Positions 3,201 to 64,000 of a DNA stretch of 64,000 nt are shown here, piece after piece. Numbering within the stretch: the first letter of the stretch is position 1; every line of letters starts with the position of its first letter. The position numbers and the translations under genes are program-made. The stretch comes from Auanema rhodensis (taxonomy: Eukaryota; Animalia; Nematoda): contig OZ059899.1 of the NCBI GenBank assembly GCA_964057225.1, positions 8,804,001 to 8,868,000 on the forward strand, read 5' to 3'. The notes below the pieces were generated by a model. That model was not told where the DNA came from, did not search any database, and worked only from the letters and a program-made list of their open reading frames with translations.

Positions 3201-6200
3201 ATTGAAAAATATAAAAAAATAACTAAAATAAAAATCGTCCAAAAAAAGTATAGAACACACAACATTGTGCAGAATAAATAATTTTTCTCAACTCAAAACT
3301 AAGCATAAAATGATATAAATTCATATTTTAGGGTATATACATAGGTCTGAATTTTATGAAAAATTGTGAAAAAAAGTGTACGATGAACAGCATCACATAC
3401 ATATAATTCTTTCAGAAAAATATTCTTTCTGTCTTTTTTTGTTCTCAAAAATCATAATAAGGAAATTAGAGGTGTGGAAGATAGAGAAATAGGCAGATTA
3501 TCTGTTTGTATCATGCAGATCGTCTAGATTCAAACTTTGAAAGTAATTCATGAAATCAGAAGAGGAAGAGAATATTGTTGTTTGACCACTGGTCTTTGGA
3601 AAAAGACAAAAAGAGAAAAAAACAATTTTAAGAATAGTCATAGCAGCTTATAAGATGTATGTTACCTTTATATACTATAATTGAAAATAAATTAAATTAC
3701 CTTCATAAAATATTGCGCGTATTACTGTTGCATAATACCAGGATAGACTCATGTTAACTAACAAAAAAAAAGGAGAAATGATTCTCCGTTTTCTGTAGTA
3801 TTTATAGGAAAAAAATTATATTGATGTCTGATATGACTGTTCTATGAAGTACTATTCGTCCATTACTTATTATACTAATTCGTTTACAATTCAACTCAAA
3901 GAACGTTAGAAATACATCCAACTTAAGCTATTATGCAAAACAAGAAACTAAAGCATCAACAAACAATATAACTCAATTTTATTTTTGTTTGTACTATAGA
4001 TGATATATATATATAATATATTTATTTATTTTCTTGAAATATGACCATATTTTCAAATATTTTCTAAGAAAATTTGAAAAATTTAAATTAATATGATGAG
4101 AATAAAGAAATGAAACTTGGGGATGTTTCCCGCTAAGCTTTGAGAAACAGCAACTTTAAAAGGAAAAGTAGAAGGAAGCTGTAAACGAAAATAAAATTAA
4201 AGAAGGATTATTTTGGAAACATACAGAAGAAGGACAGGGATCTCTTTTCCTCTTTTCATTTATATAAATATATTTATATTGATTGATTAATATTATCGTT
4301 TATGTAATCTTTAATTGCTTCCATATAAGCTCAACTACGTGCTGTTCACAAACTTTGTACATTCGACAACTTCGAATTACGATCAGTGAACATGAAAGGA
4401 TTATAAGCTGTATATTCAATTGAACAGAAAAACACTGAGAATAGGCTTTTTTCTCAAAAATCAGAAAATAAAAAAGAAAATCAAAAACGGAAGAATAGAA
4501 AATCATATTGTAATTTATCAAATATCACAAGTTGATATTATATAAAACCAGTTTGATGAATGGTTTGCCATGTACGTTCTATGAAGTTCGAGAGCAACTT
4601 TCTATTTGTTTTGAGGAAAACAGTTTCTATGATTATAAATATTGGTTTCTAATGAATATATACATATATTTTTATTATATATTATTAATAAAAGTAAGTT
4701 AATGAAAATATCTTTTGATCTTATTCCGATTTTTTGCATTTTGCAATTTGTTTGTTAAAAATAGTAAATTCTAAGGTGAATGGAACACTAAATAATATAA
4801 CAAAGCATAAAGTACAAAATAAATTAAAGCTTTCTTATTTTTTTCGTATTCCATTGCATTTGAAGATGTTATTAGGAAATATGAAGCAAAACAAATTGAG
4901 AAAATGGCCTTGAACTACAAGTATGTTTTATCTTTGTCCTATCAACTAGCGTAATCAAATCTTTATTTTGTTCTTGTTTTCAAAAAAAAAATTCTATTAA
5001 GGATTTAGAAAAAAATTTTCAATATTCATATACATGAAAGAAAATATTTCTTTCATTTTCATTAAATATATGTGTGATAAGCGATATAATCAAAGAGTAG
5101 AGTCTATTTTATAAAAGACTGCGAAGAAAAATTGGCAATAAATAACAATTTGGCTTTTTCGCAACTCTTCAAAGAAAATCTTTTGCATAGTAAGTAAATA
5201 ATAATAAAATATAATAAAACATTATATGAAAGCCTTTTTTGCAAATTTCTTCAAACTCATAAAATTTATGACCAAATTTTATAAAATTTAGTTAAGCTTC
5301 TCATCACGTAGCTATAACAGAATTATATCAATTATTCTATTTATAATCGTTTGTATTTTAATTGTTTTAACATCACGTTTACAGATTAAAGTTGAAAGTT
5401 TACATATTATATATACAGTTTTTTAGTTTAAAAACTAGTATTAAGAGCCGATTATGACTAATATATCTGCTAACAGCAAATAATAATCCGAATTTTGTAT
5501 GAAAATTTCAAATAGTGAATATTGAAGTTAGAAGACAAACCAGAATGTTATAGGTAAAATATAGAAATATTGATGAGGTAAAAGAAAAAAAGGAAGAAAT
5601 CCAAATCAAAATTAATTTTATGATTTTATTTTTTTTTTCGAGAACAAAAAAGAAGAAATATAAACGAAAGCTATGCAAGAGGGCTTGCAAGACTTCATCA
5701 TCTCGATAAATATCTTAAAAATCAAATATTCATAAGAGATATAACTGAATTATTTTATTAAAATATATAATTGAAATTATATAATTTAATAATTTTATTG
5801 AGTCTTCACTCAATTGTTTGTTAACAATGATAACTATACTACAAACAACTATAAAAATTTTATGAAATAAAATAAAAAACAATATAGATTTAATATATTT
5901 TCTTTAAATAATTATTAACTATATAAGTATAGTTCTAAACAACAAAAAAAGAACAAAAATAATTGAAAAGAAAGATGAGATAGATATACGTAGATGGCTA
6001 CCTTTTTCTTTGTCAAATTCATTTGATCTCATTCGCTCTTTTCTTTTCCAAATGAACATTGAAAAAGGTTTTTCTTAGGCCAATTGTCAAGAGCTTCTCG
6101 CGCAACGAATGACGAGTGGTCTCAGAAGAGTCAAGATTAGCTGAGGAGAACATTTGAAAATTTGAAAAAAAAAAGTTTGTTCTTTCACTTACACTCCGTC

Positions 6201-58700: not shown

Positions 58701-61700
58701 TTCAGGGTTTTCTCTCAAATTTCTTTAAAATAATATCATATCTTTTCAGTTGTATGATAAAATATCTCAACTTAAATGTGGGCCAGTAACAACAGAACAA
58801 GAAGCATCATCGCTTAAACGAGATGTATGTTTTAATATTATACATATATAGTTAATTGTTATTATAAACTATATTATTTTAGGTTATTGCAGCAATTGAT
58901 TCTTTATTAGGACCATCACCAGAATCCCGAGAGCTTCGACAACTTCTTCTTGCAAATGATTTAACTGTAAGTATAATATTTGCAAATATTTATTAACTTA
59001 TATTTGATTGTATTGTATCAAAATGATCGTTTCAGTCTTGTCTTCAAGCTCACGATGTTATAGTTTCTGAAGTTTGCGATGAAGACCGTACATCACCTAC
59101 ACAACAGTCACAACCATTAAATAATGTCTCAGGAGTAAGTTGAATATCTAAAAATATTTTGTTGAATTTTTTTGTGAATTTTGATTATTCATCTATAGAC
59201 ACCTCCACCAGTTCCATATTCATATTTAAATGGCGGAGTATTACCATTAGGAGCTAACAAAGCTGGAACATCAACTGAAGAATTCCCTGCTAGTCTTGGT
59301 ATTTATTTTTTTTAATTTTACAATTTATTCCAAATATATTGTTATAGGTGAAGATGACGATGACTTGATGGACTCTGTTTCGAGAGTACGTTTGGTTCAG
59401 TTCCAAAAGGACACAGAAGAGCCAATGGGTATAACACTCAAGGTTCGTTTCGTTTTCAATATTCTATGGACTCTTGGACTCTTGAGTAGAACTCAATTAG
59501 TACAAGAAGAAAGTGAAAGGAAAATTACATTTGTATTTTGCATGATTACTCTTTGAAATTAATTTGTTTAGGTAACAGAAGATGGACGATGCTTTGTTGC
59601 TCGAATCATGCATGGTGGAATGATTCATAGGCAAGGCAAGTATAAACATTTATATAATATTATATTATTTCAAACTTTTATTTGTCTTAGAATATATTAA
59701 TTTATAAATTTATTAGATTTATTATACAATGTTAAGATCCTTCACACTTATTCTTTCGACTATATATCTCTTTCTCTCTCTTAAGCATTACGTAGTACAC
59801 TCTCTTCATTTCTTTACTTCACTCTCATTTCCGATGTGCTCTCTCTCAGATACATCTTTTACTTACTAAACTCTCTTACTTTTTCCCGTTAGTTCTGACT
59901 ACTTCTTCTACTCTAATCTAATTCCATGTTCTCAATGGTCCTCGGAAGATGCACATTCACTTCTAACTCATAAGGGAAAAAGCCTATGTTGCTTAATTTT
60001 CAATACATTTCTTGTATACATATAAGGCTCTAATCCAACAAGTTGAAATTGAAAATCGGATTCTCAACTGAATTTCGCAAAAATTTATTTCAAATGTTTA
60101 ACAATATGTTTTCAGCTACATTGCATGTTGGAGATGAAATACGAGAAATAAACGGCATTTCAGTAGGACATAGATCAGTTGAGACATTGCAGCAAATGCT
60201 AAGAGATGCAAGAGGACAAGTGAGCAAGAATACCAAACATAGCTTTTGACATATATAATTTAGGTTACATTCAAAATAGTTCCATCTTATCGATCAGCTC
60301 CACCTGCTTGTGAAATCTTTGTCAGGGCTCAATTCGACTACGATCCAGCACAAGATGACTTAATTCCCTGTCCACAAGCGGGAGTACCATTCAAAACGGG
60401 AGATATTCTACAAGTGAGTATACAATCTGTGTTTTATATATATATTTCATTAACATTTAGGTTATATCTAAAGATGATCATAACTGGTGGCAAGCACGAT
60501 TTGTATCTTGTTTTCCTTCACTTGGTGGAAATTTATCATCTACTAGTAGTGGACAAGGCACAATTGCTGGCTTAATTCCTTCTCCTGAACTACAGGAATG
60601 GAGAACAGCTTGTTTAGCTATGGAAAGAGCAAAAGATCATTGTAAAACTTAAATCATATTTTCTATTTATAATAACTTTGTTTTAAGCTCATTGCATGTG
60701 GTTCAATCGTAAAAAGAAGTATTATACAACCAAGTATTTGCAAAAACATTCTGCTCTATTCGATCAGTTAGATCTTGTTACCTATGAGGAGGTTTTAAAT
60801 TATTAAAAAAGGGACAAGTATCACATAATATTCTTAGGTTATGAGGCTATCACAATACCGTCGTAAAACATTGGTATTACTTGGAGCTCATGGGGTTGGC
60901 CGTCGTCATATCAAAAATACATTAATTCATCGTCATCCAAATCGTTTTGCCTATCCAATACCACGTAAGTTATAATACAAATTACCTAATTATATCGATT
61001 ATGCATTTCAGATACAACAAGACCACCTCGTAAAGATGAAGTAGACGGAAAACATTACTTCTTTGTGTCTAATGATCAAATGATGTCAGATATACAGAAT
61101 AATGAATACTTAGAATATGGAACACACGAAGAAAGTAAGATTTACGTTTTTTTTTTTAAACTTTAAATAAAGATGAAAAACTGAAATTTGAGAAAGGTAA
61201 TGATATACATATGTATGTATGAATATGAAAAGTTGTAATGATCCAATGCAAATGTGAAAAAAAAACATGATTTATCTAAGCTTGTTCATTTGAGGTATGT
61301 ATGGTACAAAGTTGGAAACTATTCGAAACATTCATAAAAGTGGAAAGATTGCTATTTTGGATGTTGAACCACAGGCTTTAAAAGTTTTACGAACGGCAGA
61401 GTATTCTCCATTTGTTGTCTTCATTGCTGCTCCAAATTTACAAGGTCTCCAAGATGTGAGTTTTTCTTTATTTACTTGATGATATTTTCAACTTTTTTTT
61501 TCTTAAATTAATAATGATTTATATAAATATTTATAAATTAACTATTTTCAGCCGGATGGTTCATTGGAGCGCTTATTACGTGAATCGGAAATTTTGCGAC
61601 AAGCATTCGGTCATCTTTTCGACTACATCATTGTAAATAATGATATAGGTTAGTATTTTGAATATTGTTTATAATAATTATAATAATATTATATTATATA

Positions 61701-61806
61701 AGATATATAAAGTATATTTTCAGATGATACTATTACTCAATTAGAGCGTATAGTTGAGAAGTTACCAGCTTGTCCCCAGTGGTTACCCGTTTCATGGGTG
61801 TACTAA
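49781..61806 (+). CDS. lin-2: LIN-2/CASK MAGUK (CaMK-like, L27, PDZ, SH3, guanylate kinase)
   Basis: [28 protein letters not shown]; [14 protein letters not shown]; [20 protein letters not shown]; [26 protein letters not shown]; [10 protein letters not shown]; [12 protein letters not shown]; [15 protein letters not shown]; [10 protein letters not shown]; QWLPVSWVY*. Confidence 0.97.
52338..52391 (+). CDS. Putative alternative first exon of lin-2 ([18 protein letters not shown]), kinase-less L27 isoform
   Basis: AG acceptor 2 nt before ATG; 18 codons; GTATGT donor, phase 0 matching the next exon at 52511. Confidence 0.6.
54940..55593 (+). promoter_or_regulatory. GC-rich internal promoter / 5' leader inside the large lin-2 intron
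   Basis: Abrupt GC rise, CT/GA tracts, CCAAT and GGGCGTG boxes, directly upstream of ATG exon 55594. Confidence 0.4.
55594..55653 (+). CDS. Putative alternative first exon ([20 protein letters not shown])
   Basis: 20 open codons ending CAG|GTAGGA; phase 0, compatible with the exons starting at 56799 or 58750. Confidence 0.5.
56799..57309 (+). CDS. Transmembrane-segment-encoding exon within the lin-2 intron (probable alternative lin-2 N-terminus)
   Basis: TGTAG|ATG acceptor; 170 codons; hydrophobic [22 protein letters not shown] followed by LCC; G|GTAATT donor where composition drops to intron-like. Confidence 0.7.

Positions 61807-62432: not shown

Positions 62433-62488
<56 letters not shown>
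62404..62488. repeat. (GA)n microsatellite preceded by a 16-bp direct repeat
   Basis: gagagaacgagaaagt x2, then about 26 GA units. Confidence 0.95.
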
Positions 62489-62491
<3 letters not shown>

Positions 62492-62523: not shown

Positions 62524-64000
62524 TTATGGTAAATATCCATCTATTTTTTCCATGAACTGTTTTTCCAATTCTTCGAAGTTTTCTATAAGGGCTATCCTTA
62601 ACGGCTTTTCTAAGGAATCATCCTTCTCCAACAACTTTTTTGCAACAAAAGCAAATGTATCGCAATCATTTCGGAAAGCCTGAAAAGAGAAAAATGAATT
62701 TATTAAAGATTTAAGAAATTATTTACAAACCAATTCAAGTTTTTTCTTTTTGACTAAAAATCTCTCCAAATCTATTTCATTCAACGAAGTTATTTTTTCA
62801 TCACTAAAGTTAAATTGTATTCAATACATTCAGTGATAATATATTAATCACCGTAAACGGCTTCGAAGTTCATCATCAAGATCATCAGGTTTTGATAGAT
62901 TAGACAATCGTAGCTTTTTATTATCTTAATCGCATAACTTATTTAATAATATTGAACTTTATCTTACCACTTCCACTACAACTCACAGCTTTAACTGTCA
63001 TTAAAGCATTATTTTGAATATCTTTAAGTTCGTGAAAGTACTGAGATACTTTCAAACATGTTGTTTGGAATGAAGCTCTAGTCTAAACAATTTACTTAAG
63101 AATAAGATAAGAAAAACTTTGAATCATTTTTACCTGAGCTGTAGGATCACCTACTTTAGATGGCGGAGAATTTTCAAAACTATTTTCTTCTACGTTCACT
63201 GATATGCTTTGTCTTTTATTTTCTGTTTGTTGTCGTGGTAAATTAATAGATGATCGAACTTGTTTAGGAATTAAGCTTGTTGGTAGAAGCTTCACAGTTA
63301 GTGGATTGAAGGAAGAGGTTGAAGAAGGTTCTTCCTTAGATACTGCAGCTTGAAGCTCATTAACATCATCTGTTGATTCACTTCTTATTTTTCTGCAAAA
63401 TATCGATATTTATCTGGTTTCAAACTAAATACCAAAATTATAGCAATCATGTATTTACTGACGTTTTACGAATTAGAAGCTGCTCTTCGTGAATGGAATC
63501 GTATGACTGTATGTTTGGACTCGGAGTTCGTGATTTTGGAGAATCTATATCATCTATAGCTGGCTCGTCGATTGTTGTTGGTTCCAATATTTTTAAAGTT
63601 ACATCCTCAAATAAAAATAGGTTTTTGATTCCATAAAATATAAAATAAATACTTTTAAATTGATCTTCAATTGGTTTGTAGGAGCGACATTTTTTTCAGA
63701 CTTATTCAAGAGCAGTGGCGTTTCAGAATTTTCGCTAGTGGACATTGTCTCTGGATTTTCCTTATCATCTGAAAATGATGCCCTGTTTTCATTTTCTAAC
63801 ATTTGATTTATAATTCGTTTAGAATTATATTGACCATTCAATTGTTTGTCGCTTAGAGAGCGTGGGCTGTTCGAATCTCGTTTAGAATGTTCTGATGATG
63901 TACTTCTACTTCGAGAATATCGAGAAGATCTATATTATATTTTTTGATTAAAGAAAATTTTATCTGTTAGAGCAACCTTTCTTTTTCTCTTCGACGGCCT
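62524..64000 (-). CDS. Periphilin-like protein, 3' part (5' end outside window)
   Basis: Last exons encode DLERFLVKKKKLEL|AFRNDCDTFAFVAKKLLEKDDSLEKPLRIALIENFEELEKQFMEKIDGYLP*, resembling the periphilin C-terminal helices; upstream exons are S/R-rich and disordered. Confidence 0.65.

What the first reader, a model, noticed from the sequence alone, without database searches (positions are those of the whole stretch)
62524..62805. Periphilin-like C-terminal domain: a possible HUSH-complex subunit in a nematode
Seen: KKKLELAFRNDCDTFAFVAKKLLEKDDSLEKPLRIALIENFEEL, preceded by S/R-rich disordered exons. From recall, the human periphilin-1 C-terminus (KEIEQVYRQDCETFGMVVKMLIEKDPSLEKSIQFALRQNL) aligns without gaps (R.DC.TF..V.K.L.EKD.SLEK....AL..N). 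Established: this helical region homodimerises and binds TASOR in HUSH, which was described as vertebrate-conserved and absent from Drosophila. Inference: this nematode retains a periphilin, either within a divergent HUSH-like silencing system or acting independently of TASOR.
Basis: partly seen in the sequence, partly recalled or inferred. Interest (0 to 1): 0.7.

Follow-up and report, generated by a model that had tools for sequence, protein, structure and literature searches.

The report
Nematode periphilin homologue with an RRM
The stretch is the end of a worm gene that is a true relative of human periphilin (an RNA-binding subunit of the HUSH gene-silencing complex), but the same gene is already catalogued in C. 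elegans and many other nematodes, so the homology is real and not new, while its partners and function in worms remain unknown.

Summary
Observation confirmed. On the minus strand, window 62731-62803 and 62524-62679 are the last two exons of a 13-exon gene of about 562 codons that runs past the window end. The last exon alone matches Pfam Periphilin_C (E 1.6e-14, 54 bits against a cut-off of 27) and human periphilin-1 in PDB 6SWG (E 4e-9). The human dimer-interface residues (L326, L333, I337) and the TASOR-contact residue (L356) are kept as hydrophobic residues.

The gene encodes an N-terminal RRM, an Arg/Ser/Tyr-rich disordered region and the periphilin hairpin. It is the orthologue of C. elegans Y57G11C.9, probably the gene called melo-1/periphilin 1. 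The same architecture occurs in Rhabditina, Tylenchina and Spirurina, and UniProt already names several members "Periphilin-1 C-terminal domain-containing protein". A 2011 paper saw the Brugia match. So the homology is already on record.

HUSH membership is unresolved:
- No TASOR signature domain was detectable in this genome, which is weak negative evidence.
- One chromodomain-plus-ankyrin gene with MPP8-like architecture does exist elsewhere in the genome.

The HUSH literature says no subunit has a recognised RNA-binding domain and dates HUSH to cartilaginous fish. The RRM-bearing worm form, probably also present in flatworms, is therefore a modestly interesting and testable comparative point.

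No RNA reads could be obtained. The spliced protein was never searched as a joined sequence.

The parts
62524..62679 (-). Exon 13 (last exon): 51 codons plus the TAA stop. It encodes the core of the Periphilin_C helical hairpin: the end of helix 1, the turn and helix 2.
   Evidence: Pfam PF25234 E 1.6e-14, 54.4 bits, profile positions 28-77 of 84. PDB 6swg_A E 4.4e-9. It is the only such locus in the genome. Human L326/L333/I337/L356 map to L/L/L/I.
62680..62730 (-). Intron 12, 51 nt, GT..AG with a TTTTCAG acceptor.
62731..62803 (-). Exon 12 (DEKITSLNEIDLERFLVKKKKLEL): the N-terminal part of hairpin helix 1.
   Evidence: It aligns to orthologues without gaps. It is too short to score in Pfam on its own.
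62852..62924 (-). Exon 11: the nematode-conserved motif LRLSNL followed by an acidic stretch.
   Evidence: Conserved in all nematode orthologues aligned (L35 invariant and S36 nearly invariant in A1). Disordered in the AlphaFold model of the Auanema orthologue.
62968..63082 (-). Exon 10: the nematode-conserved helix motif (YFHELKDIQNNALMTVKA).
   Evidence: Predicted helix 8-20 of the orthologue model, pLDDT about 74-85. The donor at 62968 rather than 62987 was chosen because the spacing then matches the orthologues. Not confirmed by RNA.
63134..63392 (-). Exon 9: Ser-rich linker with the conserved LPTSLIPKQVR motif.
63463..63605 (-). Exon 8: acidic/Ser-Pro linker. Its donor is the unusual AC|GTCAGT, the only choice that keeps the frame.
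63653..63929 (-). Exon 7: the end of the Arg/Ser/Tyr-rich region, then a polar linker.
   Evidence: R7 S19 of 92 codons; begins SSRYSRSRSTSS. Aligns loosely to the RS regions of orthologues.
63977..64000 (-). 3' part of exon 6 (RS/RY-rich), cut by the window end. Exons 1-6 continue in the genome at positions equal to window 63977-65093 (L003 1977-3093). Exons 1-3 encode the RRM.
   Evidence: Exon 2 alone: RRM_1 E 0.012, profile 18-57 of 70. Orthologues: RRM_1 26-41 bits. tblastn of the Auanema protein: 75-88% identity over exons 1-2.

Best explanation
The stretch is the 3' end of the single-copy nematode orthologue of vertebrate periphilin-1. The same gene in C. elegans is Y57G11C.9, probably melo-1.

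The protein, about 562 residues by my unconfirmed exon model, has three modules:
1. A canonical N-terminal RRM.
2. About 100 residues rich in Arg, Ser and Tyr, resembling both an SR-protein RS domain and the Arg/Tyr-rich N-terminal region of human periphilin. A polar linker with two nematode-specific conserved motifs follows.
3. The periphilin C-terminal helical hairpin.

Most likely mechanism: a nuclear RNA-binding adaptor. The RRM and RS region hold nascent or unprocessed RNA. The hairpin self-associates through the conserved Leu/Leu/Leu patch at its turn, and the conserved hydrophobic stripe on helix 2 adds a third helix from a partner. In humans that helix comes from TASOR. In worms the partner is unknown.

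Shown here: homology, architecture, single copy, conservation across nematodes, and conservation of the interface positions. Inferred: RNA binding, dimerisation, partner recruitment and any silencing output.
For: - Domain identity.
- Gene model: all 12 introns are GT..AG, 11 of them 42-70 nt, and the reading frame is closed over 1689 nt. Every major exon aligns to the Auanema, Diploscapter, Angiostrongylus and C. elegans proteins.
- Orthologues carry RRM_1 plus Periphilin_C at the two ends of proteins of 513-669 residues.
- Phyletic spread over three nematode suborders, and reach to vertebrate periphilin-1, in an exhaustive HMMER search: 51 hits at E<=1e-3.
- A gapless 51-column alignment of 29 nematode-type and 14 vertebrate-type sequences keeps D, C, T, V, L17 (=L326), K, D, L24 (=L333) and L32, with a hydrophobic residue at the L356 position. 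Residue roles are from PMC7544229.
- An AlphaFold model of the Auanema C-terminal 129 residues (pLDDT 80, pTM 0.68) superposes on 6swg_B at rmsd 0.7 A over 62 columns, TM 0.81 by target.
- In human cells periphilin is the RNA-binding HUSH subunit, and its last 83 residues suffice when it is tethered to RNA (PMC11754731). This is the same RNA-binder-plus-adaptor logic.
- Synteny with Auanema: convergent with lin-2/CASK.
Against: - Exon boundaries, above all the exon 8 donor and the exon 10/11 junction, rest on frame and homology only.
- The RRM is below threshold on this genome's own exons taken singly. It is inferred from orthologues and from 75-88% identity to them.
- The homodimer test gave no verdict.
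- No partner was identified.
- The AlphaFold monomer model folds two upstream helices into a compact model (pTM 0.68). I could not inspect contacts. If they cover the third-helix surface, no external partner may be needed.
Confidence: 0.8

Rival explanations
1. It is a working subunit of a nematode HUSH-like complex. The hairpin binds a very diverged TASOR-like scaffold that also holds an MPP8-like chromodomain-ankyrin reader. The complex directs H3K9 methylation to transcribed invaders.
For: - Dimer and TASOR-contact positions are conserved, and the hairpin geometry is identical.
- TASOR-like proteins (DUF3715-SPOC-DomI) are reported in invertebrates generally (PMC10578480).
- This genome has one gene with an N-terminal chromodomain and downstream ankyrin repeats (G000:C3:5005445-5007681+). 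Its chromodomain is closest to MPP8 among solved structures: E 3-5e-5 against 1e-3 for CBX3.
- The genome carries many dispersed repeats.
Against: - DUF3715 and TASOR_alpha-beta were not found in the genome at E<=1.
- PIN_TASOR gave only a 23-bit, stop-ridden hit in sequence that does not look coding.
- The MPP8 lead over other chromodomains is only about 4 bits, and the ankyrin exons show no specific MPP8 similarity.
- The papers I read name no nematode TASOR. The DUF3715 paper mentions no nematodes.
Confidence: 0.3
2. It is an SR-like RNA-processing or splicing regulator. The periphilin hairpin serves only for self-association or for binding another RNA-processing factor, with no role in chromatin silencing.
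For: - The RRM plus RS-rich region is the SR-like architecture: 52% R+S over exons 4-6.
- C. elegans Y57G11C.9 is listed with rsp-5, rsp-6, rsp-7, swp-1 and asd-1 among genes that make NMD-targeted alternative isoforms, a hallmark of autoregulated splicing factors (PMC5777819).
- melo-1/periphilin 1 ranks fifth by degree in a neuronal splicing network model (PMC12084653).
- A conserved upstream block with a short uORF suggests post-transcriptional control.
- No TASOR was detected.
Against: - The network paper itself says melo-1 has no established role in splicing, and its model has an 8% true-positive rate.
- Strong conservation of the third-helix surface over the distance between nematodes and vertebrates implies a conserved partner.
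- The equation melo-1 = Y57G11C.9 is my inference and is not verified.
Confidence: 0.35
3. The similarity is molecular mimicry, or a gene picked up from a vertebrate host by parasitic nematodes. Mimicry is how the 2011 survey listed the Brugia fragment.
For: PMC3050887 listed Brugia A8PSR3 (TFGFVTKMLIEKDP) as a mimicry candidate for periphilin-1. In my search the named hits were only nematodes and vertebrates.
Against: - The gene is present in free-living species (Caenorhabditis, Auanema, Diploscapter, Mesorhabditis, Acrobeloides) as well as in plant and animal parasites.
- It has a nematode-specific architecture, nematode-type introns and conserved synteny.
- An Atlas cluster of 59 proteins, 98% with Periphilin_C and 20% with RRM_1, is mostly from flatworms. 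This points to old bilaterian ancestry.
Confidence: 0.02

Closest known systems
Human periphilin-1 (PPHLN1), the HUSH subunit; C-terminal domain solved with TASOR in PDB 6SWG
   Same: - C-terminal helical hairpin: Pfam Periphilin_C, about 41% identity, no gaps, rmsd 0.7 A for the orthologue model.
- Conserved dimer-patch and third-helix hydrophobic residues.
- The domain sits at the extreme C-terminus, behind a long disordered Arg/Ser/Tyr-rich region.
- RNA-binder-plus-adaptor logic.
   Different: - The worm protein has a canonical RRM at its N-terminus. The HUSH literature states that no HUSH component has a recognised RNA-binding domain.
- The worm protein has two nematode-specific conserved motifs just upstream of the hairpin.
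- No TASOR was detectable in the same genome.
C. elegans Y57G11C.9 (NP_502786, UniProt Q9U203; probably melo-1, WBGene00013307) and its nematode orthologues
   Same: - Same architecture: RRM_1 near the N-terminus and Periphilin_C at the C-terminus, in a protein of 513-669 residues.
- Same conserved motifs.
- 52% identity to C. elegans and 80% to Auanema in the last exon.
This is the family to which the gene belongs.
   Different: Nothing of kind. The RS region and linkers differ in length and sequence. Some database models (Meloidogyne, Acrobeloides) lack the RRM, possibly because the gene models are incomplete.
SR and SR-like proteins (RRM plus RS domain)
   Same: N-terminal RRM followed by an Arg/Ser-rich low-complexity region. 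The C. elegans orthologue shares their NMD-coupled alternative splicing.
   Different: SR proteins have no periphilin hairpin. The RRM here is generic: its nearest solved relatives are nucleolin RRM4, Pes4 and hnRNP H, at E 5e-7 to 2e-5. It is not an SRSF-type RRM.

Membership tests
Periphilin C-terminal domain (Pfam PF25234) | Profile match above the curated gathering score | tested here: met
   54.4 bits against a cut-off of 27, E 1.6e-14, on exon 13 alone. 51.8 bits in the whole-genome scan, at a single locus.
Periphilin C-terminal domain (Pfam PF25234) | Helical hairpin fold as in PDB 6SWG | tested here: met
   Tested on the contiguous Auanema orthologue (80% identical in the domain), because this gene's exons were not joined. 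AlphaFold pLDDT about 90 over the hairpin. Foldseek to 6swg_B: probability 1.00, TM 0.81 by target, rmsd 0.7 A over 62 columns. The Foldseek E-value is only 0.2 because the match is short.
Periphilin C-terminal domain (Pfam PF25234) | Hydrophobic dimer patch (human L326, L333, I337) and third-helix contact (L356) | tested here: met
   These map to L, L, L and I in this protein and stay hydrophobic in nearly all of the 43 sequences aligned. Residue roles are from PMC7544229.
Periphilin C-terminal domain (Pfam PF25234) | Homodimerisation | tested here: inconclusive
   Complex prediction on two copies of the Auanema C-terminal module returned 'no answer'. This is not evidence either way.
HUSH complex (periphilin-TASOR-MPP8) | A TASOR scaffold (DUF3715 pseudo-PARP, SPOC/DomI, PIN) in the same genome | tested here: inconclusive
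   PF12509 and PF23314: no match at E<=1. PF24630: 23 bits with 3 stops, in sequence that does not look coding. The scan works exon by exon in six frames and had no positive control, so absence is not shown.
HUSH complex (periphilin-TASOR-MPP8) | An MPP8-type reader (N-terminal chromodomain plus C-terminal ankyrin repeats) in the same genome | tested here: inconclusive
   One gene has this architecture (G000:C3:5005445-5007681+). Chromo 28 bits; Ank 30 bits; an open GT..AG exon chain links them; the best solved relatives of the chromodomain are MPP8.
HUSH complex (periphilin-TASOR-MPP8) | Physical binding to TASOR and transcription-dependent H3K9me3 silencing of intronless elements | not testable with these tools
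   This needs IP-MS, reporter assays and ChIP or CUT&RUN in a worm.
SR-like RNA-binding proteins | At least one N-terminal RRM | tested here: met
   Orthologues: RRM_1 26-41 bits against a cut-off of 20.7. This genome's exon 2 alone: 15.9 bits covering profile positions 18-57. Exons 1-2 are 75-88% identical to the Auanema RRM. The joined RRM of this genome was not scanned.
SR-like RNA-binding proteins | Arg/Ser-rich low-complexity domain | tested here: met
   Exons 4-6: 21 R and 22 S in 82 whole codons (52%), with RSRSRS runs. Exon 7 starts SSRYSRSRSTSS.

The most novel reading that the evidence does not exclude
Periphilin is an ancient bilaterian RRM protein. Nematodes (and flatworms) would keep the ancestral form, whose RRM does what the degenerate N-terminal region does in vertebrates. 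In worms it would work with the MPP8-like chromodomain-ankyrin protein and an unrecognisably diverged scaffold as a HUSH-like, RNA-guided silencing module. That would put the origin of HUSH far before cartilaginous fish and make it testable in C. elegans genetics.
Probability: 0.2. Interest if true: 0.7.

Novelty: already known. Interest (0 to 1): 0.35.

Why it matters
As a sequence observation it adds one more orthologue to a family that databases already label. Its value is comparative.

Reviews of HUSH date the complex to cartilaginous fish and stress that no subunit has a recognisable RNA-binding domain. Yet worms, and probably flatworms, carry a periphilin whose adaptor hairpin and interface residues are conserved and whose N-terminus is a textbook RRM. 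That supports the view that RNA binding is the ancestral job of periphilin.

It also offers a genetically tractable animal (C. elegans Y57G11C.9) in which to ask what the conserved hairpin recruits when no TASOR is recognisable. I found no functional study of the worm gene in the library.

Tried and rejected
- Exons were searched singly by reference, and the contiguous Auanema protein P0001 served as proxy for folding.
I redid that step with numeric coordinates only.
- Complex prediction homodimer: 'no answer', score 0.01. It is reported here only.
- Word-index protein searches: 3 hits each, swamped by low-complexity words. They were useless for finding other phyla, and the cap is now spent.
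- The Penaeus vannamei hit P0006 (26 stretches) is a repetitive protein without Periphilin_C, so it is spurious.
- PF12480 was a wrongly remembered accession: it is GARIL_Rab2_bd, not a TASOR domain. Ignore.
- The PIN_TASOR sub-threshold hit at C7:14706503-14706757 translates to stop-ridden text among short ORFs. I rejected it as noise.
- A poison exon in the long intron 1 (327 nt): there is no DNA conservation with the Auanema intron, so this is unsupported.
- Paper search was badly framed and returned nothing relevant.
- The Atlas search with the chromodomain exon gave only generic chromodomain clusters.
- PDB searches with ankyrin exons 9 and 10 gave nothing specific to MPP8.
- No supplementary files were held that could confirm melo-1 = Y57G11C.9 or list the DUF3715 species.

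Full report
**1. What is in the sequence**

On the minus strand, window 62524-62679 is an open exon that ends in TAA. It reads AFRNDCDTFAFVAKKLLEKDDSLEKPLRIALIENFEELEKQFMEKIDGYLP. A 51-nt GT..AG intron with a TTTTCAG acceptor separates it from exon 12 (62731-62803), which ends ...FLVKKKKLEL.

**2. Is it periphilin?**

Yes, on several lines of evidence.
- The last exon alone scores 54.4 bits (E 1.6e-14) against Pfam Periphilin_C, twice the curated cut-off.
- It matches the periphilin-1 chain of the TASOR-periphilin crystal structure 6SWG at E 4.4e-9 without gaps.
- A whole-genome scan finds this locus and no other.
- The structure paper (PMC7544229) names L326, L333 and I337 as the dimer patch and L356 as the TASOR contact. 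In the alignment these fall on L, L, L and I of the worm exon.
- In a gapless alignment of 29 nematode-type and 14 vertebrate-type sequences those columns stay hydrophobic, and D-C-x-T, V, K-D and L32 are almost invariant.
- An AlphaFold model of the contiguous C-terminal 129 residues of the closest orthologue (Auanema sp. JU1783, 80% identical in the domain) has pLDDT 80 and pTM 0.68. It superposes on 6swg_B with rmsd 0.7 A over 62 columns.

**3. The whole gene**

The gene leaves the window, so I fetched the next 10 kb (L003; window = L003 + 62000).
- A chain of 13 exons gives 1689 nt, or 562 codons. Every intron is GT..AG. Eleven introns are 42-70 nt and the first is 327 nt.
- tblastn of the Auanema, Diploscapter, Angiostrongylus, C. 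elegans and an unnamed (Logan) protein lands on the predicted exons. Identity is 75-88% over exons 1-2.
- Spacing in the orthologues favours the exon 10 donor at window 62968.
- Exons 1-3 encode an RRM (…TIFIRGLPG… / …RLFVAVRFE…). Exon 2 alone gives RRM_1 at E 0.012 over profile positions 18-57.
- The orthologues, which are contiguous proteins, give RRM_1 at 26-41 bits.
- The RRM is generic. Its nearest solved relatives are nucleolin RRM4, Pes4 and hnRNP H.
- Exons 4-6 are 52% Arg+Ser with several Tyr.
- Upstream of the hairpin lie two motifs conserved in all nematode clades sampled: F..LKEFQ..LL..VKYE and GLRLSSL.
I used exon references and the Auanema protein as proxy.
- No RNA reads could be obtained, so the model rests on frame, splice signals and homology.

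**4. Relatives and prior knowledge**

An exhaustive HMMER search with the 51-residue exon found 51 cluster representatives at E<=1e-3.
- The named hits are nematodes: Auanema, Diploscapter, Angiostrongylus, two Mesorhabditis, seven Caenorhabditis including C. elegans Y57G11C.9, two Meloidogyne, Globodera, Bursaphelenchus, Acrobeloides, Parascaris and Thelazia. The other named hits are vertebrate periphilin-1.
- The unnamed hits fall into the same two sequence types.
- One shrimp hit is a spurious repeat protein.
- UniProt already titles several of the worm proteins 'Periphilin-1 C-terminal domain-containing protein'.
- PMC12084653 writes 'melo-1/periphilin 1' for a C. elegans gene.
- PMC3050887 reported the Brugia fragment in 2011, reading it as host mimicry. 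The wide distribution in free-living worms, the shared architecture and the synteny with lin-2/CASK in Auanema rule that reading out.
- The ESM Atlas adds a cluster of 59 proteins, mostly flatworm, of which 98% carry Periphilin_C and 20% RRM_1. This is a lead that the RRM-periphilin form is older than nematodes. I could not retrieve those sequences.

**5. HUSH or not**

The HUSH review dates the complex to cartilaginous fish. Another paper finds TASOR-like proteins in invertebrates without naming nematodes.
- In this genome the Pfam models for DUF3715 and TASOR_alpha-beta found nothing at E<=1.
- PIN_TASOR gave one 23-bit hit full of stops in non-coding-looking sequence.
- These scans work exon by exon and had no positive control, so they do not prove absence.
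- For MPP8 I crossed the genome's chromodomain and ankyrin hits. Exactly one pair lies close together on one strand.
- That pair belongs to one gene at G000:C3:5005445-5007681+. An open GT..AG exon chain links a chromodomain (28 bits) to ankyrin repeats (30 bits). The chromodomain has Phe, Trp and Tyr at the three positions I take, from memory, to form the MPP8 aromatic cage. Its nearest solved relatives are the MPP8 chromodomains.
- The MPP8 margin over CBX3 is small and orthology is untested.
- So one HUSH partner has a candidate and the central scaffold has none.

**6. Function**

Human periphilin is the RNA-binding subunit of HUSH. When it is tethered to RNA, only its last 83 residues are needed. 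The worm protein has the same two-part logic, with a true RRM in front.

The C. elegans gene is listed with SR-protein genes as a source of NMD-targeted isoforms. It is a hub in a low-confidence neuronal splicing network.

I therefore commit to an RNA-binding adaptor whose conserved hairpin recruits a helical partner. I put roughly 0.3 on a HUSH-like chromatin role and roughly 0.35 on a purely RNA-processing role; the remainder covers neither reading or a mix of the two. The homodimer prediction gave no verdict.

**7. Verdict**

The claim of a newly found nematode periphilin is not new, because databases and two papers already hold it.

Two points may be worth a specialist's attention. First, the canonical RRM contrasts with the statement that HUSH has no recognised RNA-binding domain. 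Second, an MPP8-like gene is present and TASOR is undetected. Both are testable in C. elegans.

Noticed in passing
G000:C3:5005445-5007681 (+), = L009 3445-5681; the gene continues 3': A gene with MPP8-like architecture: an N-terminal chromodomain, a linker of about 330 residues that is acidic and Ser-rich, then ankyrin repeats. The chromodomain is Pfam Chromo at 28 bits, has F/W/Y at the aromatic-cage positions, and is closest to the MPP8 chromodomains among solved structures. The exon chain is open and all GT..AG. Exon 10 more likely ends at L009 5186, giving a 40-nt intron, than at 5207, which would give a 19-nt intron.
   Followed up: partly
Genome-wide, e.g. G000:C7:9014403-9102822 and about 90 other places: About 90 near-identical chromodomain hits (37-38 bits) lie inside open frames of 377-415 codons, so they form a dispersed repeat family. 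Other agents' notes call them chromodomain integrases of Maverick elements. I did not check this.
   Followed up: no
L003 3324-3400 (minus strand; equal to window 65324-65400, outside the window), aligned to Auanema L004 2831-2909: An 80-nt block about 230-300 nt upstream of the start codon is 79% identical between the two species, while the flanks and introns are not conserved. It holds a TTTCAG acceptor-like site and a short upstream ORF, M(W)VTWET-stop, kept in both. It may be a 5' leader with translational or NMD control.
   Followed up: partly
window 62436-62490: A (GA)n microsatellite of about 55 nt starts roughly 35 nt beyond the stop codon, in the presumed 3' UTR. It reads (TC)n on the gene's strand.
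   Followed up: no
window 61000-61806 (+): The guanylate-kinase end of a lin-2/CASK-type MAGUK gene converges on the periphilin-like gene; the two stop codons are about 720 nt apart. The same tail-to-tail pair exists in Auanema sp. JU1783.
   Followed up: partly
L003 2642-2968 (equal to window 64642-64968, outside the window): Intron 1 is 327 nt (about 240 nt in Auanema), while all the other introns are 42-70 nt. It splits the RRM after RNP2. There is no sequence conservation with Auanema, so there is no evidence for a regulated cassette exon.
   Followed up: partly
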